The notes beneath the pieces are model-generated. The model was given only the letters and a program-made list of their open reading frames with translations, was not told the DNA's origin and did no database searches. The translations under genes were made by a program, and so were the position numbers. Below are positions 3,791-33,515 of a stretch of 63,925 bases of DNA, piece after piece (the stretch's first letter is position 1; each line of letters opens with the position of its first letter). Where the stretch lies: positions 66,444,741-66,508,665 of the forward strand of contig NC_068986.1 in NCBI RefSeq assembly GCF_001194135.2, written 5' to 3'. The DNA comes from Octopus bimaculoides (taxonomy: Eukaryota).

Positions 3791-4981
3791 TCATTAATTT
3801 CACTATAATTTTAATTTGCAAATTATTTTGGGTATGATGTATTCATAACTCCATCCATCAAATGATCTGCAATGTTGGATAAACTATGCTAAAACTGCAA
3901 ACTCTGACTAACTGATATAGATGTCTCTTGCCTGCAAACAAAGCTCAAACCATTCTTTCTATAAGCATGTAAATTTACTTCAGAGCTTAATTCTTAATTT
4001 CTCAAAATTATCCTCCCTTCTCTTTGAAAGATTCTAACAGTTGCCACTAAAATTGTCACTTTTTTCAACAAAGAGGAAAATTTCAATTAATTAAAAAAAT
4101 TTTTCGTTGAAGACAGAATGAACTAAACAAACTAGGAGGAGACATATGAGATGGAGAGTTGCTGAAGAGGTCACAGGAAGTGTGACAAAAGATTTCCAGA
4201 CAATGGACATAAAATAAGAACAATAATAAACAAGTGAAGAATGAATATATAGTGCATGTGTTTATTTGGCAAGTTTTAAAAAAGTGACCATCTCAAAATA
4301 TTCAGAATATCATTCTTGAAATATAATGGCCAACATTTTGAAGAAAGGGTTGTTGTTTTTCTTTCCTGTTCAGTACTGAGTACTTAATGAGACACTTGTC
4401 ACTTTTACAGTGCTACCACCCCTTGTCTCTCTACACTGTCACATGAACATTATTATTGTATAAAATATCAGCTTTGATTTCAGTTTTCATGTTCTCTGTA
4501 CATTTTCTAAGGTCAAATGAGTTTACCAAATTTAATTTTAAGCAGGCACTATCTCTTTATGTCAATGAGTTCAAGTGTTTATTATTGAAGTTTGTGGGGG
4601 GTATTAATAAGTTGTCAGTATTATCTTTCCAACTATTTTGTACATATATGTGCTTACTGTATATATATATACACTTGACTTCGTGAGTGTATATGAACAA
4701 GCACAAGTAAGAATTATATTTGTATTTTGTATTTATATTTACTTGCATGAATCTATACATGTATATATGAATATATGTATGTACGCACTGACAAATATAT
4801 AGCTACAACCATGTGTGCGAATATACTAATATGCATGATACAAATATATGCCTTCATCCTCTCAATCAGAAACACACACACACACACACACACACACTTA
4901 TATAAGTTTTCAAAATTTGCAGCAGATCAGTTGATGTTTTCCTGATACTGTGTGCTGTCAACTTTAAACAGAAATATAAGA

Positions 4982-4989
4982 ATGGCTAC
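4982..4989 (+). CDS. Candidate orphan gene, coding exon 1 (ATG GCT AC; microexon 4972-4989)
   Basis: Acceptor ctttaaacag at 4971, agaATGG start context, donor gtaagt at 4990. Phase 2 joins the exon at 9661. Confidence 0.4.
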
Positions 4990-5144
4990 GTAAGTATTTT
5001 CTATCCCTATTACTTTCCTGTTCTGTACCTTATTAGTTTTTTTTTTTTTTTAGATGGTCTAGGTTTTAGATCACTGGACTATGCTTAACTTCATCTCTTT
5101 TGGTTCAAAGTTAATAATCAATTTTGATTGTTGTCCCTTTAGAG

Positions 5145-5328
5145 CAACAATTTCCAGTCTGGGGTCTATAGAGTCCCGAGGCTTGTGGTGCTGTAAGAGC
5201 CATAAAGTAGAATTGGGGTTATGTTCAAAACTTGTTGAGCAGACAGACCTTTCAAAACCTGTGGCTACCATGGAAAATTCATTTAAATAAAAGGGGACCT
5301 TTAGTAGTAGAGAGATCAGGAACCGTTG
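5145..5328. mobile_element. hAT/Charlie-like MITE (degraded)
   Basis: Ends caacaatttccagtctggggtc and ggaaccgttg resemble Charlie-type TIRs. The TSD is imperfect. Confidence 0.45.
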
Positions 5329-5357
5329 CTCTCTAGTTAATAAAATATGCATCAGTG

Positions 5358-5555
5358 CAAGTTGAAAATCCCTTATTTGAAATTCCTGGGACTGAAAGTG
5401 TGGCAGATTTTGGATTTTTGGGGATTTCAGAATATTTTTACAATTGCATCCTTGGGGTAAGACCCAAGTCCAAAAACAATATCCATTTACATTTCATAAT
5501 ATGTTTGCTCTGAAAGTAATTTTGCACAAAATTTTAATAGTTTTATATACAATGA
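5358..5555 (+). mobile_element. Tigger/pogo-like DNA transposon end fragment
   Basis: caagttgaaaatcccttatttgaaattcctgggac...gacccaagtc...aaagtaattttgcacaaaattttaatag resembles my recollection of Tigger4/MER46 termini. Not aligned to a database. Confidence 0.5.
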
Positions 5556-6723
5556 TACCTTCAGAAAGGTATGATGCTATTATGCTATGTTTTGATTAAA
5601 AGGTTACAGTATATGTGCACCATTTGTATTATATTTTTTGGTACTGGTAATAGGTTATATGTAGGGTATAAAAACAGAGCGCTGAATATGATTATAGGTA
5701 AATAAAATGAAAACTGGGATATGTGGATATTTTGAAAATATTTCTCAAAGTGACAACTGTACCTTGCATTGTTACAGGCTACCCTTTGGTAAGATATAAC
5801 ATCTGTTCAACCACCCTGCCATGGATGTGACAAAGTCATGGGACTGCTGCATGGCAGATTGCAAAGAGATAGTAGAAGAGCTCAACTGAGTCAATGGTGC
5901 TTCTTACATTGATGTTCCTTCACTGATTGCCCAGTATCATATATCCATGTATAAGCTCTCAAATCAATGGGGTCAGTAATAGAGATATATGATATACCAA
6001 GCTGTATAACTGCTCGTATATGACCCTTAATAAGGTTCTTCTTACTACTATCAAAACAATGCTGATAAAAACCTAGTTCAAAGGAGCAACTACATTTGTA
6101 ACACTAACCCATCTTAACTTAATCTAAAATATTTATAGCTTTGCCTCTAATTGTCTTCTTTGCTCCTTTTTTGACACTGTATAAAATTTATCGAAGTTGC
6201 CTCTCTCTCTTTCTCTATTACTGCCCTGGCTCTGAAAGGTGCAGTTATTCCATTGTCTCCTTAACTGCAATGTGCCCTCCCTTTCCTATGCCAACCACCT
6301 ATACTGGAAACCTCTCTCCTGTACCAGAACATCTCTTGGCAATCCTTCTTCTCCTGGCCTTTGACCTCCTCCCTCAGTAGTGTCATTTAAATTGCTGCAA
6401 TACAAACACTGTAGCATTTTATTTTGTATCAAACAAAATTAAAACATGACTGTCTAGTATTTATTATTATTTAGTTAATTAATTAACCAGTTAACTATTC
6501 TATCTGTTTATAATGAATTAACTATCTTTATTTTTATTTATTTACTTGTATTTGTATTAACATTGCTTGTACTAATGCTTGTATAACATCCACTTCCAAT
6601 GGAGGTAGCAGTAATTAATTAACCAATTAACTATTTATCTATTGATAAGAAATTAACTATTTTTATTTTTTGGAGATGTACTTGCATAGCAAGTGACCTG
6701 ATCTGAGATCGTGTGCGGGAACG

Positions 6724-6915
6724 AAAACAATTGCAGCGTGGAAGGTGTTTATAAGCCATTTAAGAAACACACAAAAACCATTAGATTCACTTCAATATTT
6801 ATATTTAATTTTCCAAAATATTTTCGTCGCTTTGAGACCATGACCTGTTGAAGTGAATCTAACAGTTTTGTGTGTTTCTTAAATGCTTATAAACACCTTC
6901 CATGCTGCAATTGTT
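6724..6915. repeat. Fold-back element with ~70-bp arms
   Basis: aaacaattgcagcgtggaaggtgtttataagc...agattcacttcaa (6724-6795) is the reverse complement of 6848-6915. Confidence 0.85.
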
Positions 6916-7104
6916 TATTTTTATTTTTATATCTATTTATTAACTTGTATTTGTATTAATATTGCTTGTACTAATACTTGTATAGCAACCACTTCCAGTG
7001 GAGGCAGCAAGTATAACACAAATGAATGATGGTAGATTAAATATGAGGACAACTGTTATGACATGTCTATTAGCAAATACTCATTAGAATCTTGTTTTCA
7101 GATG

Positions 7105-7777
7105 CTGAAAGCTGCTGTTCCCTCTCTCCATGTTACCTCCTGAGCTAGTATGCTCTGCTGGATGTGTAATGTCAGTATGCATGTATGACAGAATGTAAGC
7201 ATCTTGAGAGAAAAATTGGGTATAAGAAGCATCAGATGTAGTGTGCAAGAGAGACGACTGTCCTGGTATGGTCATGTGGTGCATATGGATGAGAACAGCT
7301 TTAGGAAGAAGAAACGATCTCTTACATGTGGAAGAGATAGATCCAAGAAAACATTGGATGAGGTGGTGAAACATGATCTGTGGATGCTGAGTCTCATGAA
7401 GGTGATGACAAGTGACTGAAGCCTTGGGTGATTTGCTGTGCTTGAGAAAACATGTCAAGCTAAGGGAAATCATAGCTGTGGCCAGTGCCAGTGACAAGTA
7501 AAAGGCACCTGTGCTGGTAACATTAAATGCACCTGTGCCAGTGACATGTAAAAGGCACAGGTGTCAATGATATGTAAAAGGTACCCATGCTGGTGACACA
7601 TAAAAATACTCATACTAGTACATGTAAAGGCACCTAGTACATTCTATGGAGTGGCTGGCATTAGGAAGGGCATCTTGCTGTAGAAACCAATCCAAAACAG
7701 ATGGAGCCCAGTGCTGCTCTCCGGCTTACCAGCTTTAGTCAAACTGTCTTACCCATGCTTATATGGAAAACAGATGA

Positions 7778-7790
<13 letters not shown>
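7105..7790 (+). mobile_element. RTE-clade LINE 3' fragment with (GAT)n tail
   Basis: Translates LREKLGIRSIRCSVQERRLSWYGHVVHMD...KTLDEVVKHDL, followed by the recurrent 3' UTR and (GAT)n at ~7773-7852. Confidence 0.9.
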
Positions 7791-7811
<21 letters not shown>

Positions 7812-7816
7812 GATGG

Positions 7817-7854
<38 letters not shown>

Positions 7855-8589
7855 GCTCCATTACAAAACTATTTGCTTTATACTGAAGTAAAAATAGTTG
7901 CAGCATTTTATAGTCATGAGGTCAAATCCGATTAAAAAAAAGCCGTTTCTACTCCTAAGTGAGAAGTTCCTTTGGTAAAATCATTATCATTGACATTATT
8001 GTACTTATCCTAATCAGTACTATCAATGTCATCATCATCATCATTATCATCATCATCAGCAGTAGTAGCATGTTGTTGTTAGCCTCTCCTCAAGGCACCA
8101 GGTTTTAAGAATTATTTTCCTACTCTTCCTCCCAAAGCATTACTTCACCTGTTGGGTTGGCCTATAGGGAATGTGCATCTAGTTGTAAACATCATCATTC
8201 TCATCAACAGCACCATCATCACTATAATCATCATGTTTAGCATCATTAGCTGCATCATTGTCAGGTAATCATGGACAAACTCCTTCATTGGTATGCACTT
8301 CAATATCTTGCACTGATTATAACTGCTTAGGTATGATTCTCTGTAGTGCAAAGCCAGCTCAGTACATTGCAAATGTTTCAGTGGTAACCATGAAGAGACA
8401 ACTAATAAATACAAGAAGACATTAGAAGAGCACATCTTGCATGCCAAGGCATATGGTGGTTGTTGTCACAGAGTCTGTTGTATTGCTGAACCTTAATTGC
8501 ATTGGCAACAAACATTGCTGAAAAAGCACATGCAAACTTTAGACTATTTCTTTACATTAGACGACTTCTACCTCTCTTAATCTCTGTTT

Positions 8590-8822
8590 CTTATTTCTTT
8601 ACTCTCCACAAGGGGCTACACTCAGAGGGGACAAACAAAGACAGACAAACGGATTAAGTCGATTATATCGACCCCAGTGCATAACTGGTACTTATTTAAT
8701 CGACCTCGAAAGGATGAAAGGCAAAGTCAACCTCAGCAGAATTTGAACTCAGAACGTAGCAGCAGACGAAATACCGCTAAGCATTTCGCCTGGCATGCTA
8801 ACGTTTCTGCCAGCTCGCCACC
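8590..8822 (-). mobile_element. tRNA-derived SINE (family A), near full length
   Basis: CpG-retaining copy: ...ctcagaacgtagcagcagacgaaataccgctaagcatttcgcc...gccagctcgccacc. Confidence 0.85.
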
Positions 8823-8979
8823 TTAATCTCTGTTTCTTAGTGTGTAATGTGAGATGTGAATACAAATTACGACCAGCTTACATCATGATATTGCAAGAAC
8901 AGAATTATTATAAAGAAAATTTACCTGCATCAAAAGTAATGTACCTAAATCTTGGTGAAACCTAGACACATTAATCTTA

Positions 8980-9500
8980 GGTGCAGGCATGGCTGTGTAG
9001 TAAGAAGCTTGCTTCCCAACCACATGGTTCAGGGTTCAGTCCTACAGGGTGGCAATTTGGACAAGTGTTTTCTACTATAGTCTCAGGTCAACCAAAGCCT
9101 TGTTAGTAGATTTGGTAGACTGATAGAAGCCCATCATTTCCGGTGTCATCTATTTGTTCCTATTACCATTCTATACCCATATAACACTGTGTTTTGGACC
9201 ATCTGCATATTGAGTTCTACATCAGGTTATTAGTCACACCATGCCTAAGTGAAATATTAATATGTATATATGTATGTATGTATGTGTGTGTCTTTCTGTC
9301 TGTGTTTGTCCTCCACTGCTACATGACAACCGGTGTTAGTGTGTTTACATCCCCATAACTAAGTGCTTTGGCAAAAGAGACCAATAGAATAAGTACCAGG
9401 CTTAAAAAAGAATAAGTATTGGAGTTGATTGATTCAACTAAAAATCCAAGGCAGTGCCCCAGCATGGCCACAGTCTAATGGCTGAAACAGATAAAAGAAA
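8980..9500 (+). mobile_element. SINE (family B)
   Basis: ggcatggctgtgtagtaagaagcttgcttcccaaccacatgg head. Further copies at ~16520, 23690, 24340, 24980, 34005, 35120-35455, 35955, 38130, 40015, 48420, 49160, 61230 and 62825. Confidence 0.8.
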
Positions 9501-9660
9501 AGATCTATCTTTAGAGGGTGTCATCACTCATCTAACATGCCTGAGTACATGACCTGGCTTGAATGTAAATCCTTGGAGAATCAAAAACAAACAGAAGCAG
9601 TTATGAGAAAATGGTGTTAGAAATTAACACTAAATCATCATGCCTAATTCATACTTTCAG

Positions 9661-9775
9661 AAATGACCATCACTTTAGAATGATTTCATATCGTGTACCT
9701 TCACAGAATACAAAATTGAAAAAATTAACCAAGACAAGTCTAATTACTGATTATTGGTTAAAGCCGCTTATGAAG
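9661..9775 (+). CDS. Candidate orphan gene, exon 2
   Basis: Acceptor catactttcag, donor AAG|gtaaga, only one open frame (phase 2 to 0): NDHHFRMISYRVPSQNTKLKKLTKTSLITDYWLKPLMK. Confidence 0.55.
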
Positions 9776-10229
9776 GTAAGATATATTCTTTTTTAAAAAA
9801 ATTGCCAGTATTCAAGTAAAGCCATAGCCTAATGTATGGAACCAGCAAAAGAGTAAATGCATCGTTGTGTGGTAAGAAGTCCACTTCACAATAGTATGGC
9901 TCCAGGTGCAATTCCACAGCACAGTACCTTGTGTAAGTATCATTTACAGTAGACTTAAGGTCTCTGGTCTACATATACTTTGCAAATAGAATTTGGTTCA
10001 TGGAAATTGAGAAAAATACAATATATATGTATACATTGTGTGTGTGTGTGTGCAAATTTTGTGTGAATTAGGAGACTGCAACAACTGGAATTTTATAAAT
10101 AGAATTATGAACCTTTTCTATTATGAGGGCTTATATACACTGTATTAGACTATTTTCTATTATCAATATATGGTGAAAGCACATAATTCTATTTATAATA
10201 TATACACATTCTGCACAAATGTCATTGTG

Positions 10230-10730
10230 GAGTGGTAGTAGATGAATTCAGTCTGCATCCATTGTCCTGCAGCCTTAGTGTGGGCTGATCCCCGCAACAT
10301 GCTGCTTTGAATGGCACAATTAGAAGGGGCCGTGACACGGCTGGCTTCTTGTCCCAACTTGAGCCTGCAGACCTCAGCTGTGGGGGCTGTAAGTGCCCCC
10401 TTCCCATTTGGAGGAGGTAGATCTCTAGTCTGAGATGTGAAGTGCAGTAACACATTCTCCAGCTTCAATCTTGCAGCATTGGCTGTAAGTCTGGGTGTCA
10501 CCACTCATAATGTGGAGGAGAGAAAAATTAACGAATACAGGGGCCTTACTATCAATTTGTGCCAGCTACCATCAAGAAATCAGGTGTTCTTGAACCCCAT
10601 ACTACTGATTTCCTCCAGAAAATAGGGTCAACAGTGGCCTGTCAGAAAAATGAGCACCACAAGGTGGAGTGACTGCTGCAGCAAGTGTCATTGGCCATCC
10701 TCTGTAGTACTGACATCTTGGTCATTACCA
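10230..10730 (+). mobile_element. Non-LTR retrotransposon remnant with restriction-like endonuclease domain (CRE/R2-type)
   Basis: Translates (with stops) HAALNGTIRRGRDTAGFLSQLEPADLS...GEKN*RIQG..QFVPATIKKSGVLEPHTTDFLQKIG...LLQQVSLAIL, matching the H..LN / E.RK..KY / FVP.A.ETSG pattern of RLE C-termini. Confidence 0.7.
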
Positions 10731-13224
10731 TGGGTCATGGCTGAGCACACCATTTATTCTGGGGTATCTGGTTCATCGTCCCGTCCCCTTCCATCTTCCA
10801 CTGATTTACCCTACCTTTTTTCTTTTCTTTCTTTTCCTTTCTTTCTCTTTTTCCCAGTTTCTTCATATTTAAATTTTATAATTATTTTGATTACAATAAT
10901 TTACTTGAATACTAAACAAAGAAGAAAAAATAAAATAAAAATATGTGTACATATTGACCTTGTTTGTGTTTATGCTTATACTGCTGTTATGGTAATGTTC
11001 TGTCTATTTTTATTTCCTGTAACTAGGTAGTTCAGCAAATAAAAATTGATAAAATAAGTTTCAGATCGAAATAACTACTGTGATATTGATAGGATCAACT
11101 AAATCCTGACAATTCACTCCTTGACTGTAGTCCAATGATTGAAACAGGCAAAAATCAAAAAGAATGCACATCTTCCACATACAGGCAACCACTTAGATCA
11201 TTTCATAAAAATACAGATCTGAAAAAAATAGTTGGAATTAGGATTTTGTAACTCACTGGAGTGAGGCAAGTACAATGGTATTTATCTTGCCTAAAGAAAC
11301 AGCATGTATTAAACAAGAGGATTATCCGTAATTTTACTTATAGTTTGATATTTACCTACAGGCCAACATGTTTGAGACATTTAGAAAGTTAACCTTTAGA
11401 AGACAACAATTTACATGTACTAAAATTACATAATGAAATTTGGATGGGTTTGTGTTAGGAAAGGCATTCAGCTGTAAAAACCATGCCAAAACAGACACAG
11501 AAGTCTGGTACAGGCTCCTGCCTGGCCAGCTCCTGTCAAACCATTTAATCCATGCCAGCATGGAAAGTGGACGGTAAATGATGATGATGATGATGATGAT
11601 GACGATGACGACGACGACAATGACGACGACGATGTCCTTCCTTTGTAACTCCTGATTTTATTTTAAACAAAATTTCAAAACACAAAACTTAAATGACGCA
11701 ACCTCAAGTGAATTCATTAATACATAGTATTACCACTTAATCAATTAAATATTCTCTCTCAATACATACTCCTAATATAATTTAAATTTGATTTTGTAGG
11801 CTAGCATTGAAAATGTGACTATATTAATCTAACTTTGTTTTATGAGTTATAGTTTTGTTTAACAAGATAAGCTAAGCAAAAACTGTGCACAATAAAAATT
11901 CTCAATTTTATTTAATTGGGGATGGTTAACATTACAACATTTATCATATATTAGTAATAATCTGATTCATTCTAGGAATCTTATAAGAAAAATAATAAAG
12001 CTCAGTTATTGTATGATAAGTTTGATGCATTAAAATAGAGAAGCAGAATGGCAAAATTATTAATAAGCATCTAACAAGACTGAAGTAAGTCTGCCTGTTT
12101 AGCATTGCCATTCAATTTCATTATCTTAATTTGTTAAATTTAAAGTGTATTGGATTTCAGAGATATTCTAAGTATTGAATGAACATTAACGACCTTGTGG
12201 TTTATAAAACTGAAGGTCGTATAATTATGTGGTGAGAGAACAAGTACAGAATTACTGAATTAGAATTGATAGCTCACAAGTATTTAAATGAAAGTGATTT
12301 GGATCTCAGAAGTATTTTAAGTGAGTTGAAGATAGTATAGAACTATAACAATAAAGCATTTAGTGCAGGGCTTCTGATAATGTTTAAAACCATAGAAAAT
12401 GCCAGTCTTGCTCTGACTGGCTCTGCATTCCATCTTTTGTTTTGATTGAGTAAAGCTCTGTTTGTTATCTGGAATAATACTCTACTTCAGAGAGTGGAAG
12501 AGAATGCACTTCTAGAAGATATCCTGCATTTATAACTGAGCTAACCTTTATCACCCAGTTCACCACATATATGTATGTATGGATGGATGGATGTGTATAT
12601 ATATGTTTTCTTTGGGATTTATTTTATGTTTTTTCCTTTGCAAGACTCAAGCTGGTCACTAACATAATGAGAAGGCTCTTTTGCCTAAGTCAAGACAGAT
12701 TTTGGTTATTTTCATGCCATAGAACTGCCCATGAAGAGTTGATGAACCTACTCAACAGCAAAAATTTCATTGTTTTTAAAACAATTATTTGTCTATAGAG
12801 TACTGACATGCAAACCAAAGTGTTGATGTTTATAGCTCTTTGTACCATATCTTTGTTAAGACTAATATTCCTCAGTGACTCTTCTCCCCATGTATCTTCC
12901 CTGTAGCAAATAAGTACAAAAAAAGAAAAGAATAGTATTGTTTCACCATTATTGTGGCATCTATTGAATGACAGCTTTTTTTGTTGGGATGCTACACCCT
13001 AAATTTTCCCAATAGTGTTGAAGAAAGCAAATGGAAATCCTTTTCAGTATGTTCTCCCTGTAATTTCAACATCAAGATGTTTACTTGAGGTGGTAGATTT
13101 GAGATTGTTTTTTACCATAACATATGGTCAACTCAAACATCTGTTTTTCTCTTTTTCAATTCATTTCTTAGTAATAATGTTGTTATAAACAATGACTATA
13201 ATGATAATAACACTCTTTATAATC

Positions 13225-14375
13225 AAACAACCTGAGAACTGGCAAGCCAGGAGGCTGAACTAGGCTCCAATCTGATTTGGCAAGGTTTCTACAGCTGGAT
13301 GCCCTTCTTAATGCCAACAACTCTGAGAGTGTAGTGGGTGCTTTTAGGTGCCAATGGCACGGGAGCCAGTCAGGCAGCACTGGTATTGGCTATGCTCGAA
13401 TGGTGTTTTTTATGTGCTACTGGCACAGGTGCCAGTCAAGTGGCACTGGCATTGGCCATGCTTGAATGGTGCTTTTTACATGCCAGGCAGGCAGCGCTGG
13501 CATCGGCCATGCTCAAATTGTGCTTTTTACATGCCACTTGCATGGGTGCCAGTCAAGTAGGACTGGCATTGGCCACAACTATGATTTCACTCAGTTCAAC
13601 AGGTCTTCACAAGCACAGCATATTGACCAACAATTGAAAGGTGCTTTTCAACGGGGCAGTTAAAAAGCATTGGCATCAACCATGACTACGATCTCACTTG
13701 GCTTGCCAGGTCTTCTCAAGCATGACATATCTCCAAAGGTCTTGGTCACTTGTCATTGCCTCTGTAAGGCCCAACGCTCGTAGTCATACTTCATCACCTC
13801 ATCCCATGTCTTCCTGTGTCTACCTCTTCCACAGGTTCCCGCCACTGTTAGGGTGTGACATTTCACATAGCTATCCTCATTTATACATATCACATGACCA
13901 TACCAGCACAGTCGTCTCTCTTGCACACCACATCTGATGCTTCTTATGTCCAACTTTTCTCTCAGAGTGCTTACACTCTGTCATGTATGCACACTGACAT
14001 TACACATCCAGTGGAGCATACTAACTTCATTTCTTTCAAGTCTATGTATGTCCTCAGCAGTCACAGCCCATGTTTCACTGCCATGTAGTATGGCGTACAC
14101 AGGCATCATACAGTCTACCTTTCACTCTGAGCAAGAGGCTCTTTGTTACCAACAGAGATAGGAACTCTCTGAACTTTGCTCAGGCTATTCTTATTCTAGC
14201 AGCTATGCTCTCAGAACATCCACCTCCGCTACTGACTTGGTCACCTAGGTAACGGAAGCTATCAGCAACTTCTAGTTTTTTCCCCTGGCATGTGATAGAA
14301 TCTGTTTTCTGTACATCTTTGGTGTTTATTGCACCTGTGCATCTGTCACACACAAAAACTATCTTCCCCATAACT
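13225..14375 (-). mobile_element. RTE-clade LINE 3' fragment
   Basis: LEVADSFRYLGDQVSSGGGCSESIAARIRIA and IRSIRCGVQERRLCWYGHV...GRGRHRKTWDEV, followed by the family 3' UTR. Confidence 0.92.
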
Positions 14376-14379
14376 TCTG

Positions 14380-16036
14380 CAGTTCCAAAACCAATTCACT
14401 CCAAATTTGGCAAGAATATTACCCATGCTTAATTGACTGTTTTAAACTAATGTTTTGTCAAGTTTATTAGCATTAAATTTGCAATTTACTGGATTAAACT
14501 TAGTTTTTGGCTTACAACTTCCGCCATTTACTCACACGTGAAGGATTGTGGGGCAGTTCTACCTTGCTGATTTGATCTGTTTACATTAGTGTTTACTTAA
14601 ACCCCCCCACTATTATCGCCTATGGTCATGATGCCCCCCACCACTTCAGCACAAATTTTCTCTAATTACCCTCTGCTCATGGTGATAACACAGGGTGAAC
14701 TGCAAGCATGACCTTTGACATGTAGGCGTGAACACTATTAATGTGCACCCCACTTTTTTGATCTGTGTACATTAGTGTTTATTTAACCCCCACCATTATT
14801 GCTTATGGCCATGATGCCCCCTCCTTTACTCACTTCCCCTCCCCCTATTATCGCCAACAACCATAATGCCTCCTTTTCACCACCATTTTCCTTAATGACA
14901 TTATGTCAATGGCCAATATGGAGTGAACTGTGAACATAACCTTTGACCTATGTGTGTGAACACTATTGATTGTCCACTGTAGTGAGCCTATCTGATTAGT
15001 TCTTTGACTGAATTTCATTGGTGGAACACAATTCACCTGATCATGCCAGTGTGAAATTATGATTACTGATGCGCTTCCGAGCATATCTGATATGTGCTTC
15101 GGCTTACAGGTTAGGCCTACCATTTGATCTACATTATTGCTTTAACTTCATACTTCCTGTTGAAATTTTTCATTGTCCCCATACTCAATTAAACTAGCTC
15201 TTTCACACTGTTTCTGCCTACCAGTTTTTAGCTCATGTGCTGTTAAAAAATATTGCATTCAGTGTCTTTGTGTTCACATAGCTAACTGTCTGTCCCTGCT
15301 TCCACCTTTTTTTAATAATATGTTTAGTAGGTTCACTTTTTATACAATGTGCCAAATTTGCTTTTCAGTGTCCCCTTTTGCCCATTTTTTAAAACTCACA
15401 ATTTAAACATAGTCCAATACTACTGCCATGCCATCTAAAAAAAGAATGCACCTTGGCCATAAAACAGAGTCTGCTTCAGCTGCCAAAAGGAGGTGGGCGA
15501 GCCATGTTTTTTTCAAGGCCAGTAATGTAGGATGCTCAAAATTTATTCGTACTTGCCTTAAATGTGGTCTACAGAGAGGTGTTGTAGGCACTTCATGCAC
15601 CAACTGCTTTCAAATTCGTGAACCCCAGTGTCTCCACTACACCAGTGCAACCTTGCAGACCTGATATGTTGTGAGTGCTACTGTAGTTATGCTTTCAAAG
15701 TTACTAACTTTCCTTAACCATGTTTCTTTTCCTTTGTCCAACCTAGGTTTGTCATCTGTTTTCACAGAGTTCCCCATTTCACAGCAACATTTCTATTGCT
15801 TTCAGTGTAGAGGGAAAAAAAGGCCCTTTTCAGGGTCACTTTACATACGATTGTTATACCACCTGAGAACACATTACAGCCCTTTTCAGAACTTCATATT
15901 AAACTGTTACCACTTGGTTTCAGCGGTACTCGGCAACCAATTTGGCATTAACGTTATTTATGACACAGGAAATTTACTAAAGTATCAAAAACATTGTAGT
16001 ATTTGAATCCCAAGCAATCCCAGGTACTTCTGCTAG
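14380..16036 (+). mobile_element. Helitron-like non-autonomous element
   Basis: Ends cccaggtacttctgCTAG|T, has internal imperfect repeats (14560-14650 vs 14760-14830) and a short ORF at 15428-15664. Confidence 0.5.
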
Positions 16037-16831
16037 TATATATATTTATAAATATATATATAAATACATATATGCATGTATGTATGTATGTATGTATGTA
16101 TGTATTGGTAGTTAGCTAGATAAACACAGTCTTGAGATGTATATTTACATGAAACACAGAAAATACAGATTACAGAATCAAGAAAACAATAACAAAAGAA
16201 CTGAAAAATCTTACAGTCTTATCTCAACAACTATTTCAAGAAGCCTATAACTTAATGTAATAACCATATTCATATGTAGCATCTGCAAGATTTCATAGGT
16301 GTGTGTCCTGCAACTGGTCCCAAGGTGTCTTTTCTCATGAGCAAGTCATATGTGATGACAGAAGTACACCTCAATCTCATTGTGAATGGAGGACAAAATT
16401 AAATGATTACAGATAGGCAAAATTACATTCGAAATTTTAAGTCTCTGTATCATCAGTTCACTGATTGTTGCATGTCATCAGCTTATGCATATTCAGTGCA
16501 CATTAGCACTGTCATTGAGAAATATATATACATGATTGGCTTTTCTTCAGTTTCTATCTACCAAATCCACTCACAAGGCTTTGGTTGGCTTGTGATAGTA
16601 CTAGAATACATTTGCCTAAGGTTCTGCACAGTAAGACTGAACTGGGAAGCATGTAGTTTGGAAGCAAATTTCTAATTACACAGTTACACAAGCGCTTATA
16701 ACCATGACTGCACTTAGGATATTTACTTACAAAAAAAAAAAAAAAAAAAAAAAAAAGTAGATATCTGTTAGAGTTTAAATAATGCACTATACTCTAAAGA
16801 GTTAATATGATATCTAATATGTCTTATGTAG

Positions 16832-16883
16832 AATGACAAACCAATGTGTCCTTGGTTGCTAAAGGGATCTTCTGGAAATGATT
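16832..16883 (+). CDS. Candidate orphan gene, exon 3
   Basis: Acceptor gtcttatgtag, donor gtaagt, phase 0 to 1: NDKPMCPWLLKGSSGND. Bridges exons 2 and 4 in frame. Confidence 0.5.
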
Positions 16884-16991
16884 GTAAGTATTCTCTTGAA
16901 TAATACTTCCTTTGTATTAACAAATAGAGTTATTTATGAAAATAACTACTCACACACATGCACACACACACACACATATATATATTGCATA

Positions 16992-17029
<38 letters not shown>

Positions 17030-17983
17030 CACACACACACACCCATAATATATATATGTATGTATATATAAAATAAATTGAAATTGCACTAAGAGTGTAT
17101 ACAAGATGATTTATCTATATTAATATTAATATGCTTCACTGGTTTCATATTTGTGTGGTTTTCAAAGGTGCAAGATTTGAGGGTTGTGAAAGAGTATTGC
17201 GAATGATGCATTTTACGACACAACTCCACATCCCTCATATCTTACACTTTCTAATGTCGGATTCTCTAGGGTTGGAAGCAAACAAAATTTATTCGTACTT
17301 GCCTTAAATGTGGTCTACAGAGAGGTGAAACTGGTTAAGTGTATCAATATAAATATTAATAAATTTTCCTAAACATTCTCAGTGCATTTTCAGCTTCTTT
17401 TATTTCATTTATACTGAAACTATACATACTTATATATATGTAAATGCATGTCAGGACTGAAATCTCATGTGAATGAAATCAAAATAATACTGTAATAAAT
17501 ATGCTTTGAAGATGTATAATTCTCAATTCCTTTTTATGATGTCTTGAATATATACTCTGCATGTTGCATAAAATCTAAGGAAGCAAACTTAGGGTGTATC
17601 TGTCTAGTGAAGTACAGTGTAACTGTTTATCTTAATTTTATATTTTCCCTATCATTCAATGTAGTTAGCTGGAACCAGAGTACTAATAAAGTAGCTGCCC
17701 AGATTCCAAATCCCTATTCCATATATATTTATATATATACATATATTAATATTAGTTTACAGTATTATAAATCCATTATGGCTGATCTTACCAATCAGTT
17801 TTGCATTAGGGGTTCAATGGAGTGTTAGGTAACAGTCCGATTATGTAAGCTGTACTCTTCAGAGGAAGCTGTTAGGAAATGAAATATGGTGACTGCCATA
17901 TTTCATACATGCATACATACACACATACATACATATATATATATATATGCATGTGTGTGTGTGTGTATATATATAAAAAATGA

Positions 17984-18118
17984 ACAGAATGCGATAAAAA
18001 AATCCAAGGCTATGAAAGATTTCAGAACATTTATAAAGAGAAGGTCTTACAGCTGTTTCCGTGTAGAGGCTTACAGCTGTTTCTGTGTAGCCTTGGATTT
18101 TTTATCTCATTCTGTTAA
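17984..18118. repeat. Short fold-back between (TA)n tracts
   Basis: aacagaatgcgataaaaaaatccaaggcta / tagccttggattttttatctcattctgtt. The loop contains a tandem cttacagctgttt duplication. Confidence 0.8.
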
Positions 18119-18353
18119 TTTTTTATATATATGCATGCTAATATATGACCTACGCTGGATTCCTCATTTGTATAATCATCGAACCTGGAGCTTAGCTATA
18201 GTCTGTCCATAGCAATTATTCAGCATTACCTGACACTTTTGGGTCTTCTTGACACCATTACCTCTCATAACCTATATATATGTTGTTATATTTGGGAATG
18301 GTCATCTTTTGTTAGTAAACACATGCATTATTTATTTGATTTTCGCTTTAGCC

Positions 18354-18356
<3 letters not shown>

Positions 18357-18402
<46 letters not shown>

Positions 18403-18442
18403 CATTATTATTATTATCATTATTATTATTATTATTATTATT
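18357..18442. repeat. (ATT)n microsatellite
   Basis: Direct reading; explains the poly-Ile and poly-Leu ORFs. Confidence 0.98.
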
Positions 18443-18585
18443 AGTTTATTTGTTAGAATTCTTTCATCACACATTATGAAGTCTATTCAACGACTTTCTG
18501 TCTCACATACCACAGAAAAACAAAATGGAATAAGCAGGACAAGAGGTGACATGTAAGACAAAAAGTTAGGAAGGGCACGCAAGAT

Positions 18586-19224
18586 TTTCCTCTCAATCTT
18601 TGAATTTTTCCATTGAAAATTTCAAATTGATAAAAGTGATATTTTATGGAAACAAAACTGTAGCTATGTATAAGATTCAGAGAAGGAATCTAAAGTTGAA
18701 ATATAAATTGGAATTGAATAAATATAATTCAACTAAAATTAACATGAAGATAGATGAACACCTTAAGATAATAATGTTGCAAAAATATAAACTAGAAGAA
18801 CAAACTTTAGGTTAGTTAAAATATGTTTGTGACATATAAATTCTTAAGGCAAATTCACTGCAGTTGTCAAGGAGATAAAATTCTCTTTTATGATAAAAGG
18901 TGTAAAAATTGTAGCTTAATGAAAATGAGTCAACATTAGTGATTGAGTTTTTAGTTAAAGCTACAGCTTTAATCTGCCCAGCGTTAATTCCTTTTGGTAT
19001 TTCCCATTGAGGAAGGCTAAAAAGTCAGAAACACAAGACAAGGAATCCACTAGGGGGAAACATTGGATAGATATGGTGTTTTTATTCAATTCCAATTTTT
19101 ATTTTAACTTTGGATTCTCTCTCTGAATCTACAGTTTTGCTACAGCTACAGTTTTGGTTTCATAAAATATCACTTCTATCAATTTGAAATTTCCAATGGA
19201 AAAATTCAAGGATTGGGAAGAAAA
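18586..19224. mobile_element. MITE with ~80-bp terminal inverted repeats
   Basis: tttgaatttttccattgaaaatttcaaattgataaaagtgatattttatggaaacaaaactgtagct is the reverse complement of 19144-19224. Confidence 0.75.
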
Positions 19225-19323
19225 ACTTACATTGAAATTGTTAAAACTAATTTGTTGTTGGCAGATCAAATCCTCTGCTCATATACAGCTGAGAATATTT
19301 AGTGTCTTTGTTCTGTTGTTCAG

Positions 19324-19488
19324 CTACTTCTCTGTCACATATCAAGAATCCTAAGAAACTTCAGTTATCCCACACTCAGCCTATTGACCGCTCAGAGCAT
19401 ACTCGTGCTTTAAATTCAGCTAAAATGAGTAAAGTAGACCTACTGAAGAGGAAATATTGGTATGAAGAACCGAAACCTGTATCTATCT
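19324..19488 (+). CDS. Candidate orphan gene, exon 4
   Basis: Acceptor tctttgttctgttgttcag, donor gtaagt, 165 nt open, phase 1 to 1: TSLSHIKNPKKLQLSHTQPIDRSEHTRALNSAKMSKVDLLKRKYWYEEPKPVSI. Non-repetitive. Confidence 0.65.
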
Positions 19489-20128
19489 GTAAGTTGATTA
19501 TTTTTGGTGATAATTATATTTGTTACGATTGTTTTCTATGAAACTTTTCTAAAATGTTTTGTGCAGAAGTAAGACACATAAACTGATAGAAACACAAATA
19601 AACTGGAAAAGATTGAAGGGCATATAAATAGACTGACAGTGGGACTAGCTATTTAGATAGTTATATCTCGCTTGTTAAAAAGCTGAAGGTGAAGACAAAT
19701 TTCTGGAGTTCATAGCTAAATGGAAATGCTACACTGATTATGCTGCTTTTCGTAGTTATGTTAGGCATAACATAATCATCATCATTATCATGATCCACAT
19801 TTAACATCCATTTTCCATGCTGGCATGGGTTGGGTGGTTTGACAGGAGCTGGCCAAGCTCTACTATTGTCTGCTTTGACATGGTTTTTATGGTTGGAAAC
19901 CCTTCCTAACACCATCACTTTACAGAGTGTACAAAGTGCTTTTTATGAGGCACCAAGAACAGTGAGGTCTGTTGAAGGGAGTCAATACTACACCCCTCAG
20001 TTGTGTGGGTTGTGGTATCGAGGGAAGTGAATTTGTGCCAGATGATGAGAGATTAGAGTATGACAGAGGGACAGAAACAAGTATCTTGCTACAAAGGAGA
20101 TACATGGCTATCCCAGATGGAAAAGGAG

Positions 20129-20159
<31 letters not shown>

Positions 20160-20173
20160 GGGGAGAGAGAGAT

Positions 20174-20211
<38 letters not shown>

Positions 20212-20339
20212 CTGTATCAGAGTATGCTCTCAAGTTGGTTCTTATTCTATCAGTCTCTTTTGTTGAACTGCTTAGTTGCAGGGATGTAAACAAATCAATG
20301 CTAGTTCTATATTTAAGAGATGAGGAATTATATACATTA

Positions 20340-20480
20340 TTTACATTTGATGGATATTTGTCCTCATCTTGTTTGTTGTTAACACAACGTTTTGGCTGAT
20401 ATACCCTCCAAACTTCATCAGGTGTCTTGGGGAAATTTCAAACCTGGGATCTCATTCCTAAGGTATTTTTCGATGTTGTT
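20340..20480 (-). mobile_element. Penelope-like terminal repeat remnant
   Basis: gacacCTGATGAag...atcagccaaaacg, next to (ATT)n. Shares gacacctgatga with the element at 22-375. Confidence 0.45.
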
Positions 20481-20481
20481 G

Positions 20482-20547
<66 letters not shown>

Positions 20548-20789
20548 TCAATGCCTGGAATAATAGATAGAGAACACCACTGGAAATCATGAAAACTAAA
20601 AGAAGCAGCATATATGCTAGGACACAACAACCTCCTAAGCATATGGGAACCGGTATTAAGGAAGGATAGGAAAATATTAGATTTATAAGCCCTAAAATTC
20701 ACTCCATGGCATATGGCATAGTGGTTAAGAGTGCGGGCTACTAACTCCAAGATTCCGAGTTCGATTCCAGTCAGTGACCTGAATAATAA

Positions 20790-21990
20790 TAATAATAATT
20801 AATTCTTGTTTTATTGGCCACAAGGGATAATATAAATCAAAACATGTAAGGACAAACACAGGACAATAAAAAAGAAAGGTCTGTATAAACATTTGATAAC
20901 AACGAAAATATAACAAGTACAAAACTCCCAACAGGGGGAGGTGCTTTAAAGATTACTCATGGAAAAACCCATAAAAGCCTTTTCTCCGTTTTATACCATT
21001 TTTTTTACAGTTGTATTCTCAGAATTGGTCCATCCATACTGGACATTCTTCTGACATTCACCCACCTTTCAACAAATTTGCTACGAGACAACACTTCCCT
21101 CTCTACTCTCACCTTCCTTTTCAAGTGGAACTTGAAAAAGTTGATGAGGCCTTGGCCAAAGAGGAAAGTGTCTGACTTTAGCCCTTTCAAATGGGTCTAC
21201 CATACCACCTCTTTTGCTACAGCCACCAGACAAATGAAAATTGCCTTGCTCTCCCAGTTAAAGGAGGTCGGTGGGGCAATCTTCACTATGGATTCAGCTG
21301 ATAGCTGGATCTGTTCTACATGCGACAGTAGCTGTTTGGCATAAACCCACAGGTCAGCAATATTTGGGCACTGGACAAGTGCGTGCAGAACAGTTTTATG
21401 GCTCTGAGTACACCTTGGGCAGGCCTGGCTGCTGGCACTTCCATGCCGGTAGAGTTTATCTTGAACAGGCAGCGCCCCTCAATAGCGCTGCCAGGCAAGG
21501 GACTTTTGGAAGTTATCCATGGGCCTCAGCCCGAAAGTTCTGCCAAACAAACTGCTTAGCAGATCATCATCGACACCTAGAGTTTCCCCAAGAATGTCTT
21601 TGCACTTTTCCTGCTTGACAGCACTCAAAGTGCCAAGCGCCCTTTCTCGGTGTACGTTTGATCCAAGATTGCAGCTCCGTCAAAGAGACGAGCTGTGGAA
21701 AGGAGAGTCTGATGAACAGTGACCACACCTGCTCACCGTCCAAAAAAGACTTGAGATGCTGTAGCCTGTGCGCATGTCTGCACATCAGCAACCACGGAAT
21801 GCCAAGGCCTCTGTTCAGTGGCTGTTGACAGCAAATGGAGCTCCTGACCAGTGGTACCTGACCCTTCCACAGAAAATGGAAAAGCAAGTGCACCAGCTTG
21901 GTCAACCAGCGGTCAGGTAGCACTTTTGGGTCTACTGTAGGCAATATGTGTTTTTTGTGAGGTCTGGGGGTGGCAAAGGGAAAGGCTACC
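20790..21990 (-). mobile_element. L1/Tx1-like LINE 3' fragment
   Basis: LFHFLWKGQVPLVRSSICCQQPLNRGLGIP...(ORF2 C-terminal region), then AATAAA and a (TTA)n tail at ~20790. Confidence 0.65.
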
Positions 21991-22132
21991 CTAAGCAGCA
22001 CACACTCTAGCTATGCTAGTGACTTTAGTGGTACCCTTAGGATTGAACATGTGACTGATTCTCATGTAACTGAATCTGTGTTGGTTCACATAGCTTTTAT
22101 TTCAGAACTGGATTCTTTTTTATTATTTTCAG

Positions 22133-22197
22133 CCAGCAAATATTCAATGGGTGCAAAGAATCACTTTCTTGGACTTTCTGATGCCCCAAGGAGCTAG
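22133..22197 (+). CDS. Candidate orphan gene, terminal exon 5
   Basis: Acceptor ttttttattattttcag, phase 1: SKYSMGAKNHFLGLSDAPRS*. AATAAA at 22447. Confidence 0.5.
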
Positions 22198-22354
22198 AAT
22201 TCTAACTAACAATTTTCAAGAAGCAATGTTGTTTAATAAGAAACATCTTTCCCTAATGTTTGTGTCTGATAAACTCATCAGTATTCCTGTTTTGATTATG
22301 TGAACAACATATGAATTATGTCATACTTCCAAAATTGAAGTGCTATTTCACATA

Positions 22355-22389
<35 letters not shown>

Positions 22390-22609
22390 TCTCTGTCTCT
22401 CTCACCATCCCATCCACACACATGAAAATTATTAAGTGATTATCTTAATAAATTAATCAACAAAATGCCTAATTGTATTTTTTCTTATGAAAAGTAACTT
22501 TCTTACTGTTGTGAAGGTTATGAAATTTTTTCTCAATTTTAGTTTTGGCAACATCCACAGTTTGTATTGTATGCTCTGGAAGCCTATGTTGAAGCAATTA
22601 CAATGAGTT

Positions 22610-28849: not shown

Positions 28850-29220
28850 ATCATCATCATCATCATCGTTTAATGTCCGCTTTCCATGTTAGCATGGGTT
28901 GGACGATTCGACTGAAGACTGGTGATCCAGATGGCTACACCAGGCTCCAATCTGATTTGGCAGAGCTTCTACAGCTGAATGCCCTTCCTAACGCCAACCA
29001 CTTCGAGAGTGTAGTGGGGGCTTTTACGTGCCGCCGGCACAAAGGCCAGTCAGTCGGTACTGGCAACGGCCACGCTCAAAATGGTGTATTTTACATGCCA
29101 CCTGCACAGGAGCCAGTCCAGCGGCACTGGCAACGATCTCACTCGAATGAATCTTCACGTGCCAGGAATGCAAAGCTGCGGCACAAGTGCCAGGAAGGCG
29201 ACGCTGGTAACGATCACACT
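28850..29220 (-). mobile_element. RTE LINE 3' UTR fragment
   Basis: (CAT)n-cgtttaatgtccgctttccatg... family end. Other copies at 33690, 39210, 41000, 52165, 52745, 53520, 55250, 57030 and 62540. Confidence 0.9.
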
Positions 29221-33387: not shown

Positions 33388-33515
33388 NNNNNNNNNNNNN
33401 NNNNNNNNNNNNNNNNNNNNNNNNNNNNNNNNNNNNNNNNNNNNNNNNNNNNNNNNNNNNNNNNNNNNNNNNNNNNNNNNNNNNNNNNNNNNNNNNNNNN
33501 NNNNNNNNNNNNNNN
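33388..33515. other. Assembly gap
   Basis: Run of N. Other gaps at 34634-35105, 45366-45689 and 53622-53817. Confidence 1.

What the first reader, a model, noticed from the sequence alone, without database searches (positions are those of the whole stretch)
4972..22452. Hidden five-exon plus-strand gene for an unrecognised 134-aa basic protein
Seen: five non-repetitive segments, each with canonical splice signals (three gtaagt donors and one gtaaga), join with matching phases (2, 0, 1, 1) into a 405-nt CDS: MATNDHHFRMISYRVPSQNTKLKKLTKTSLITDYWLKPLMKNDKPMCPWLLKGSSGNDSTSLSHIKNPKKLQLSHTQPIDRSEHTRALNSAKMSKVDLLKRKYWYEEPKPVSISSKYSMGAKNHFLGLSDAPRS*. The ATG has A at -3 and G at +4, and AATAAA follows at 22447. 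The ORF track cannot see it. I recognise no domain. Small Lys/Ser-rich proteins of this kind are often ciliary or sperm microtubule-associated or lineage-specific (inference only). The acceptor at 4971 implies a further upstream exon, so the N-terminus could be longer.
Basis: partly seen in the sequence, partly recalled or inferred. Interest (0 to 1): 0.7.

Follow-up and report, generated by a model that had tools for sequence, protein, structure and literature searches.

The report
Already-annotated small octopus orphan gene

Summary

The gene is neither hidden nor unrecognised. The peptide is 100% identical over its full length to Octopus bimaculoides LOC106877207 isoform X2 (XP_014781542.1, UniProt A0A0L8GFR8). 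The window is CM046606.1 from position 66,444,741.

Orthologues exist in O. sinensis and O. vulgaris (88-91% identity). In O. sinensis every splice site, the ATG, the stop and the AATAAA are kept, and the only CDS indel is in-frame.

The splice signals alone do not beat chance: 55% of random sequences of this size and composition give an equally good chain.

Nothing outside Octopus matches in 1.84 billion representative proteins, Pfam or the PDB. AlphaFold gives pLDDT 51, meaning disordered. The protein has pI 10 and no signal peptide or membrane segment.

Constraint is weak and odd. dN/dS is about 1.2 (13 nonsynonymous, 3 synonymous changes), yet exon divergence is half that of introns.

The ciliary idea found no support, and Flattop is explicitly rejected.

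Verdict: an ordinary, already-annotated, lineage-restricted orphan gene encoding a small disordered basic protein of unknown function.

The parts
4693..4706 (+). Coding part of the alternative first exon (ATGAACAAGCACAA, 'MNKHK', phase 2, donor gtaaga at 4707), used by annotated isoforms X1 (136 aa) and X3 (109 aa)
   Evidence: Located by six-frame search and read directly. The annotated CDS span of 17,505 nt runs from 4693 to 22197. The ATG, the 14-nt length and the GTAAGA donor are kept in O. sinensis.
4982..4989 (+). Coding part of the first exon of isoform X2 (ATGGCTAC, 'MAT', phase 2, donor gtaagt at 4990). The 5' boundary of this exon was not determined.
   Evidence: Identical in O. sinensis.
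9661..9775 (+). Coding exon 2 (115 nt), shared by all N-terminal isoforms; donor gtaaga
   Evidence: Ortholog at L001 15462-15576 with AG/GT kept.
15059..15109 (+). Alternative first coding exon of an older 110-aa model (P0005, 'MITDALPSISDMCFGLQ'); donor gttagg
   Evidence: Poorly conserved in O. sinensis.
15806..16006 (+). Alternative terminal exon of isoform X3, giving a 66-aa non-conserved tail and a stop at 16004-16006
   Evidence: The O. sinensis counterpart carries frame-breaking indels, so this tail is probably not a functional protein segment.
16832..16883 (+). Coding exon 3 (52 nt); donor gtaagt
19324..19488 (+). Coding exon 4 (165 nt); donor gtaagt. O. sinensis has an in-frame 9-nt deletion here, and its isoform X1 uses an in-frame alternative acceptor 21 nt upstream.
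22133..22197 (+). Coding part of the terminal exon (62 nt plus stop TAG at 22195-22197). This is the most conserved block, with no differences from O. sinensis.
22198..22470 (+). Probable 3' UTR, holding a (CA)n microsatellite at 22357-22387 and AATAAA at 22447-22452
   Evidence: AATAAA is conserved in O. sinensis. The cleavage site itself was not determined.

Best explanation
This is the known gene LOC106877207 of Octopus bimaculoides (chromosome CM046606.1), on the plus strand at window 4693-22470. It is a small spliced gene with two alternative first coding exons, both phase 2 and each with its own ATG, and four constitutive downstream exons. The main product is a 134/136-residue protein that is very basic (pI 10), rich in Lys and Ser, and has no signal peptide, membrane segment, domain or predicted fold. 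It is a taxonomically restricted ('orphan') gene, detectable only in Octopus species in the databases searched. It evolves fast at the amino-acid level while keeping its reading frame, splice sites and a strongly conserved C-terminal third. Shown: the gene structure, its identity to existing models, its orthologues, the absence of detectable relatives, and the low-confidence, largely unstructured model taken as predicted disorder. Inferred: the transcripts rest on RNA evidence, because an 8-nt first coding exon is very hard to predict ab initio and recurs in four gene models from at least three annotation sources. Inferred with low confidence (about 0.2) as the mechanism: an intracellular, intrinsically disordered basic protein that works through short conserved aromatic-basic motifs (DYWLKP, CPWLLKG, KYWYEEPKP, SKYSMGAKNHF) by docking on an acidic partner such as nucleic acid or a cytoskeletal surface. 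It would act as a binder, not as an enzyme or a folded structural unit.
For: The peptide is 100% identical with 100% coverage to XP_014781542.1 / XP_052824796.1 / A0A0L8GFR8. The window equals CM046606.1 from 66,444,741 with 0 mismatches in 32 kb, and the annotated CDS span equals 4693-22197. The O. sinensis and O. vulgaris orthologues are 88-91% identical. In O. sinensis all eight intron-end dinucleotides, the ATG, the stop and the AATAAA are kept, and the only CDS indel is an in-frame 9-nt deletion. Noncoding DNA around the gene has 0.0084 indel events per base, 77% of them frame-breaking. Under neutral drift, P(ORF intact) = 0.018, or 0.005 including the splice sites. CDS substitution divergence is 3.8% against 7.3% in aligned introns (p = 0.003). 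The last 41 codons have 2 changes in 123 nt (p = 0.005). The coding frame has 0 internal stops against 11 in each other frame. Both alternative first exons supply an ATG in the same phase. As an internal control, the isoform-X3 tail exon is not frame-conserved. There are no relatives outside Octopus among 1.84e9 representative proteins, no Pfam hit and no PDB sequence hit with a single sequence or a profile. AlphaFold gives pLDDT 50.7 and pTM 0.15, with one helix at residues 95-102. The protein has pI 10.04, K+R 24, S+T 26, and a maximum 15-residue hydropathy of 0.11.
Against: Protein-level purifying selection is not visible. Nei-Gojobori dN/dS is 1.16 (13 nonsynonymous, 3 synonymous). The changes fall 9/3/4 on codon positions 1/2/3, so there is no third-position excess. 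Only one close species pair could be compared, so the counts are small. If the exons simply evolve at half the neutral rate for RNA-level reasons, an intact ORF is not very surprising (my rough estimate is P about 0.13). No RNA-seq, ribosome-profiling or peptide evidence could be examined here. No paper mentions the gene. 'Octopus-only' depends on which cephalopod proteomes the databases hold, and small genes are often left unannotated. The proposed binding mechanism rests only on composition and motif conservation.
Confidence: 0.8

Rival explanations
1. The spliced transcript is real, but the ORF is not maintained for a protein. On this reading the locus is a conserved spliced non-coding RNA, or a very young proto-gene whose 134-codon ORF is tolerated and not selected.
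For: dN/dS is 1.16 with no third-position excess. There is no homologue, domain or fold. Exon conservation is at the nucleotide level, with synonymous sites no more diverged than nonsynonymous ones. Some annotated isoforms (X3, P0005) carry non-conserved coding tails or heads.
Against: The coding frame has 0 stops against 11 in each other frame over 405 nt, and 134 open codons at that stop density would be rare (my estimate: about 1e-5). The ATG sits in a good context and the stop lies in the last exon. Two alternative first exons each provide an in-phase ATG, and both are conserved in O. sinensis. The only CDS indel between species is a multiple of three, while 77% of nearby noncoding indels are not.
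Confidence: 0.14
2. It is a diverged ciliary or sperm-flagellar microtubule-associated (inner) protein, whose similarity to known families is too weak to detect.
For: It is small, basic, Ser/Lys-rich and disordered on its own, with conserved Trp/Tyr motifs, which is the general look of many microtubule inner proteins (my own knowledge, not a test). It has a 'MATN' start like Flattop. In octopods, genes dating to the octopod ancestor are reported to peak in male reproductive tissue (PMC7656900).
Against: No Pfam family matches at E up to 10, including PF22611 Flattop. No PDB chain matches at E up to 10 with a sequence or a profile, although solved axoneme structures are in that library. BLASTP against Flattop finds only a trivial 13-residue match, E 0.30. 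hhalign of the Octopus profile against a Flattop profile gives probability 0.1%. True Flattop is 46% identical between human and scallop, so a real mollusc orthologue would be obvious. No RFX X-box lies within 1.5 kb upstream of either ATG, and the window total of 5 is at the chance level of 3.45. Axonemal structural proteins are normally conserved far beyond one genus (my own knowledge).
Confidence: 0.04
3. It is a chance chain of open segments with splice-like signals, propagated by ORF-seeking gene predictors, and not a real gene.
For: Equally good chains arise in 55% of random sequences of this size and composition, and several exist elsewhere in the window. I could not inspect RNA evidence.
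Against: The same structure, including an 8-nt first coding exon, appears in four gene models from at least three annotation sources across three species. All splice sites, the start, the stop and the poly(A) signal are conserved, and the frame is kept. Exons are half as diverged as introns.
Confidence: 0.02

Closest known systems
RefSeq gene LOC106877207 (Octopus bimaculoides), isoform X2 XP_014781542.1 / XP_052824796.1; UniProt A0A0L8GFR8
   Same: The protein is identical over all 134 residues. The chromosome, strand and CDS span are the same, and the alternative isoforms X1 and X3 map to exons found in the window.
   Different: Nothing differs. This is the same gene. It carries no functional name in any source.
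LOC115212749 (Octopus sinensis) and CAI9723753.1 (Octopus vulgaris)
   Same: They are orthologues. They share 88-91% identity, and the O. sinensis gene has the same five coding exons with the same phases and conserved splice sites.
   Different: They are 131 aa long because of an in-frame 3-codon deletion. O. sinensis and O. bimaculoides differ by 13 amino-acid changes. The last three introns are shorter and the first longer (5453/4577/1204/852 nt against 4671/7056/2440/2644 nt).
Taxonomically restricted (orphan) genes of animals, as described for octopods in PMC7656900
   Same: It has no detectable homologue outside a narrow clade. The protein is short, disordered and fast-evolving, with dN/dS near 1.
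   Different: It has five coding exons and alternative first exons. This is more elaborate than the one- or two-exon structure usual for recently de novo born genes (my own knowledge). That favours an older gene diverged beyond recognition or not annotated elsewhere. Its tissue of expression is unknown here.
Flattop / CFAP126 (Pfam PF22611), a ciliary microtubule inner protein
   Same: It is a small protein starting MATN/MATH, with conserved Trp residues.
   Different: There is no sequence or profile similarity. The invariant Flattop core (ANDRGHL, PWG-F-GTW) is absent. Flattop is conserved across deuterostomes and molluscs, whereas this protein is seen only in Octopus.

Membership tests
RefSeq gene LOC106877207 (identity, not just family) | Protein sequence identical over its full length | tested here: met
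   100% identity and 100% coverage at 134 aa. An exact look-up returns XP_014781542.1, XP_052824796.1 and A0A0L8GFR8.
RefSeq gene LOC106877207 (identity, not just family) | Same genomic place and CDS span | tested here: met
   The window equals CM046606.1 from 66,444,741 with 0 mismatches in 32,197 bases. The called gene span of 17,505 nt equals window 4693-22197.
Protein-coding gene (as opposed to a spliced non-coding RNA) | Reading frame, start, stop and splice sites conserved in another species | tested here: met
   All are kept in O. sinensis, and the single CDS indel is 9 nt. P = 0.018 (ORF) or 0.005 (with splice sites) under neutral drift.
Protein-coding gene (as opposed to a spliced non-coding RNA) | Purifying selection on amino acids (dN/dS well below 1, third-position excess) | tested here: not met
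   dN/dS is 1.16 (Nd 13, Sd 3). Substitutions fall 9/3/4 by codon position. Only one close species pair was available, so power is low.
Protein-coding gene (as opposed to a spliced non-coding RNA) | Direct evidence of transcription, splicing and translation | not testable with these tools
   No RNA-seq, ribosome-profiling or proteomics data were reachable. No paper cites the gene or its accessions.
Taxonomically restricted (orphan) gene | No detectable homologue outside a narrow clade | tested here: met
   A profile HMM search of 1.84e9 representative proteins returned only Octopus proteins. The word-indexed search of 5.8e9 clusters gave the same result. The limit is that unannotated cephalopod genomes could not be searched at the DNA level.
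Taxonomically restricted (orphan) gene | Absence of the gene, or of its ORF, at the syntenic locus of outgroups | not testable with these tools
   No genome of another octopod, squid or Nautilus is available in the collections.
Ciliary / sperm microtubule inner proteins | Sequence or profile similarity to a known family member or a solved axonemal chain | tested here: not met
   There were no Pfam hits apart from noise at E 0.088 to an ABCA1 domain, and no PDB hits at E up to 10 with a sequence or a profile.
Ciliary / sperm microtubule inner proteins | RFX X-box near the promoter (usual for ciliary genes in animals; my own knowledge) | tested here: not met
   Five matches in the window against 3.45 expected by chance. 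None lies between 3179 and 14239, so none is within about 1.5 kb upstream of either ATG. This is weak negative evidence only.
Ciliary / sperm microtubule inner proteins | Expression in testis or ciliated tissue and axonemal localisation | not testable with these tools
   No expression or localisation data were reachable.
Flattop / CFAP126 (PF22611) | Match to the family profile, including the invariant ANDRGHL and PWG-F-GTW core | tested here: not met
   PF22611 is not hit. BLASTP gives E 0.30 over 13 residues. hhalign gives probability 0.1%. The core columns are defined.

The most novel reading that the evidence does not exclude
The gene is a truly Octopus-lineage-born protein-coding gene, either de novo or diverged beyond recognition. 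It has already acquired five coding exons and alternative in-phase start exons. Its disordered basic product has a lineage-specific role, for instance in male reproductive or neural tissue, where octopod-restricted genes are reported to be enriched (PMC7656900). The unusual pattern would then reflect relaxed or positive selection on a young protein, combined with exonic RNA-level constraint. That pattern is exon divergence at half the intron level, dN/dS of about 1 or more, and an excess of first-position changes.
Probability: 0.25. Interest if true: 0.35.

Novelty: already known. Interest (0 to 1): 0.12.

Why it matters
It matters little for biology as it stands. The gene model has been public since the 2015 O. 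bimaculoides annotation and is present in RefSeq for two Octopus species, always as 'uncharacterized protein'.

The check is useful for the scan in two ways.

- Canonical splice signals plus matching phases are not by themselves evidence, since about half of random 64-kb sequences yield an equivalent chain. Such findings need external support.

If the gene is confirmed as expressed and translated, it would be one more example of a fast-evolving cephalopod-restricted microprotein. That is of modest interest for studies of orphan-gene origin.

Tried and rejected
1. Flattop/CFAP126 homology, a lead from the MATN start and the Trp motifs. Rejected by BLASTP, Pfam and profile-profile comparison.

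2. Any ciliary microtubule-inner-protein membership by sequence. Nothing was found in Pfam or the PDB. The X-box scan was at chance level and empty near the promoter.

3. Structure-based annotation. The AlphaFold model is too poor (pLDDT 50.7, pTM 0.15). I therefore did not run fold search, because its matches would be meaningless.

4. Paralogues in the window. tBLASTn finds only the gene's own exons.

5. Exon versus intron conservation as an exon detector. The two Octopus species are too close (7% intron divergence) for more than a twofold contrast.

6. Literature look-ups by LOC, XP and UniProt identifiers returned no papers.

7. Look-up of the O. sinensis X2 product by exact sequence failed, because only the longest isoform is indexed. 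The X1 look-up worked.

8. tRNA and Rfam scans of the window found nothing.

9. I ran no further search on weak hits or on the neighbouring helicase gene. The exhaustive HMM search and the PDB match already answered those questions.


Full report
**1. Is the observation in the sequence?**

Yes. Reading the five segments and splicing them mechanically gives a 405-nt CDS from exons 4982-4989, 9661-9775, 16832-16883, 19324-19488 and 22133-22197.
- The exon lengths are 8/115/52/165/65 nt, so the phases are 2,0,1,1.
- The donors are gtaagt, gtaaga, gtaagt and gtaagt. The acceptors are cag, tag, cag and cag, each behind a pyrimidine-rich tract.
- The ATG has A at -3 and G at +4. The stop TAG is at 22195-22197, and AATAAA is at 22447-22452.
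- Exons 2-5 are single-copy in the window; exon 1 is too short to test.
- The other two frames of the spliced CDS have 11 stops each, and the coding frame has none.

**2. Is it more than chance?**

Not on the signals alone. I enumerated every chain of at most five exons that meets the same standard: GTAAG[TA] donors, YAG acceptors with at least 9 of 15 upstream pyrimidines, an ATG with purine at -3 and G at +4, introns of 60-7100 nt, and a CDS of at least 405 nt.
- The minus strand of the window has 6 distinct such chains.
- The plus strand with the gene masked has 5.
- Of 60 first-order Markov simulations of the window, 55% contain at least one, with a median longest chain of 416 nt.

The case has to rest on outside evidence.

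**3. Outside evidence: the gene is already annotated**

- The peptide is 100% identical over 100% of its length to 'uncharacterized protein LOC106877207 isoform X2 [Octopus bimaculoides]'. The accessions are XP_014781542.1, XP_052824796.1, UniProt A0A0L8GFR8 and an EukProt entry.
- The window is CM046606.1 (assembly GCA_001194135.2) starting at 66,444,741, with no mismatch over the 32 kb compared. The called gene span of 17,505 nt corresponds exactly to window 4693-22197.
- Other annotated products map onto the window:
  - Isoform X1 (136 aa) and X3 (109 aa) start in an upstream alternative first exon (ATG 4693, 14 coding nt, donor gtaaga at 4707) that splices directly to exon 2.
  - X3 ends in an alternative terminal exon at 15806-16006.
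  - An older 110-aa model starts at 15059-15109.
- No other gene is called within 10 kb on either side in either species.

Inference: an 8-nt first coding exon is very hard to predict ab initio. The gene-model sources are the original O. bimaculoides gene set behind UniProt, NCBI's models for O. bimaculoides and for O. sinensis, and the O. vulgaris annotation. Its recurrence across these implies transcript evidence. I could not look at the reads.

**4. Conservation**

Orthologues exist in O. sinensis (LOC115212749, 131 and 138 aa) and O. vulgaris (CAI9723753.1, 131 aa), at 88-91% identity. I fetched the O. sinensis locus (L001).
- All five coding exons are present there, with every GT and AG kept.
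- The ATG, the stop, the alternative first exon (ATG, 14 nt, GTAAGA) and the AATAAA are conserved.
- The only CDS indel is an in-frame 9-nt deletion.
- In 13.8 kb of aligned noncoding DNA around the gene, substitutions are 7.3% and indel events are 0.0084 per base, 77% of them not a multiple of three. Under that neutral regime, simulation gives P(ORF intact) = 0.018, or 0.005 when the eight splice dinucleotides are included.
- CDS substitution divergence is 3.8% (15 of 396; p = 0.003 against noncoding). The last 41 codons have 2 changes in 123 nt (p = 0.005).
- As an internal contrast, the X3-specific tail exon has frame-breaking indels in O. sinensis.

The classical coding signature is missing, however. 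Nei-Gojobori gives Nd 13 and Sd 3, so dN/dS = 1.16. The 16 changes fall 9/3/4 on codon positions 1/2/3. With one close species pair the numbers are small. Honestly stated, the frame and the exon sequence are constrained, but selection on the amino-acid sequence is not demonstrated. If the exons merely evolve at half the neutral rate for RNA-level reasons, an intact ORF has a probability of roughly 0.13 (my estimate). The non-coding rival is therefore weakened mainly by three points: the stop-free frame, the two in-phase alternative start exons, and the stop codon lying in the last exon.

**5. What is the protein?**

- There is no Pfam family. The only line is noise, E 0.088 to an ABCA1 regulatory domain.
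- There is no PDB chain at E up to 10, with the sequence or with a three-species profile.
- A profile HMM search that reads all 1.84 billion representative proteins returns only the Octopus proteins themselves.
- AlphaFold2 with the shallow alignment gives mean pLDDT 50.7 and pTM 0.15. No residue is above 70, and there is one short helix at residues 95-102. The protein is predicted to be disordered, so I did not run a fold search on such a model.
- Composition: 15.4 kDa, pI 10.04, 24 Lys+Arg against 10 Asp+Glu, 26 Ser+Thr and 9 Pro. The maximum 15-residue hydropathy is 0.11, so there is no signal peptide or membrane segment.
- Conservation is blocky. The variable patches lie around residues 24-25, 58-60 and 80-90, between conserved stretches that hold all three Trp residues (DYWLKP, CPWLLKG, KYWYEEPKP) and the invariant C-terminus SKYSMGAKNHFLGLSDAPRS.

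**6.

The ciliary or sperm microtubule idea has no support.
- The Pfam and PDB searches were empty, although the PDB copy contains chains from many solved axonemes.
- I followed the one resemblance I could recall: Flattop/CFAP126 also starts MATN and has conserved Trp motifs.
  - My recalled sequence is Flattop (PF22611, 263 bits).
  - BLASTP against the Octopus protein finds only a 13-residue match at E 0.30.
  - True Flattop is 46% identical between human and scallop and has an invariant ANDRGHL / PWG-F-GTW core.
  - A profile-profile comparison of the Octopus alignment with a diverse Flattop alignment gives probability 0.1%.
- An RFX X-box scan gives 5 matches in the window against 3.45 expected, and none lies within about 1.5 kb upstream of either ATG.
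- 'Lineage-specific' is the part of the guess that fits.

For context, a comparative octopod genome study reports that genes dating to the octopod ancestor are most highly expressed in male reproductive tissue, and species-specific genes in neural tissue (PMC7656900). This is a base rate, not evidence about this gene.

**7. Best explanation and rivals**

- Best (0.8): the known gene LOC106877207, a lineage-restricted, alternatively started, five-coding-exon gene for a small disordered basic intracellular protein.
- Mechanism I would bet on (about 0.2, inference from composition and motif conservation only): it docks through short aromatic-basic motifs on an acidic partner such as nucleic acid or a cytoskeletal surface.
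- Rivals: a real transcript whose ORF is not selected as a protein (0.14), a diverged ciliary or sperm microtubule protein (0.04), and a chance chain propagated by predictors (0.02).

**8. Novelty and score**

The gene is already known as a model, and its function is unknown everywhere. The five-exon structure with alternative in-phase first exons argues against a very recent de novo birth (my own knowledge of typical de novo genes). It favours an older gene that has diverged or is unannotated elsewhere, which DNA-level searches of other cephalopod genomes would settle. Interest is low, at 0.12.

**9. Limits**

- No RNA, ribosome-profiling or peptide data were reachable.
- No cephalopod genome other than the two Octopus loci was reachable.
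- Only one species pair was available for rates.
- 'No homologue' means none among annotated proteins in the databases searched.

Noticed in passing
window 56460-56741, minus strand: An open segment matches human F-box DNA helicase 1 (FBH1, PDB 9xzj_F residues 530-587, E 6e-12), including the helicase motif 'VILVDEAQDLTP'. A second gene, an FBH1-like helicase, therefore lies on the opposite strand downstream, convergent with LOC106877207. Its other exons were not mapped.
   Followed up: partly
window 791-2109, plus strand: Decayed LTR-retrotransposon pol fragment upstream of the gene. It has an RNase H-like domain (PF17919, E 2.6e-6, just below the gathering score) and an integrase zinc-binding domain (PF17921, E 2.9e-8) in broken frames.
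   Followed up: partly
window 21200-22010, minus strand (intron 4, ending about 120 nt before exon 5): Non-LTR retrotransposon fragment (zf-RVT, PF13966, E 1.5e-6). About 2.2 kb of the window (19734-21914) corresponds to only about 100 nt in O. sinensis. The element is therefore an insertion in the O. bimaculoides lineage or a deletion in O. sinensis, and it explains much of the intron-4 size difference (2644 against 852 nt).
   Followed up: partly
window 7626-7796, 11447-11600; 9260-9498, 23683-23894, 24982-25356; 13244-13437, 28851-29110: Several short interspersed repeat families (about 150-400 nt, 69-84% identity) each hit many places in the O. sinensis locus as well. They are probably SINE-like elements, and they fill much of the introns and flanks. 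They were not classified. There are no tRNA or Rfam matches in the window.
   Followed up: no
window 33388-33515, 34634-35105, 45366-45689, 53622-53817: Four assembly gaps (runs of N), at least some flanked by microsatellites such as (TA/TATA)n and (GA)n. The 'ORFs' listed across them are artefacts.
   Followed up: no
CDS of the gene compared with L001 (O. sinensis): The substitution pattern is odd. Exons are half as diverged as introns, yet 13 of the 16 changes are nonsynonymous and 9 of 16 hit first codon positions. This may be small-number noise or relaxed or positive selection combined with RNA-level constraint. It remains unexplained.
   Followed up: partly
window 13337-13575 (intron 2): Tandem repeat with a 66/117-nt unit, about 2 copies, 79-82% matches. 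Long trinucleotide arrays (TTA)30 at 18354-18443 and (TTA)20 at 20485-20543 lie in introns 3 and 4.
   Followed up: no
window 14240-14253 (intron 2): A perfect palindromic match to the RFX X-box pattern (GTCACCTAGGTAAC). The window-wide count is at chance level (5 against 3.45 expected), so it is probably meaningless.
   Followed up: no
L001 about 21389-21409, and window 19303-19323: O. sinensis isoform X1 (138 aa) uses an alternative acceptor 21 nt upstream of exon 4, adding 7 in-frame residues. The same 21 nt are also stop-free and in frame in O. bimaculoides, by my reading.
   Followed up: no
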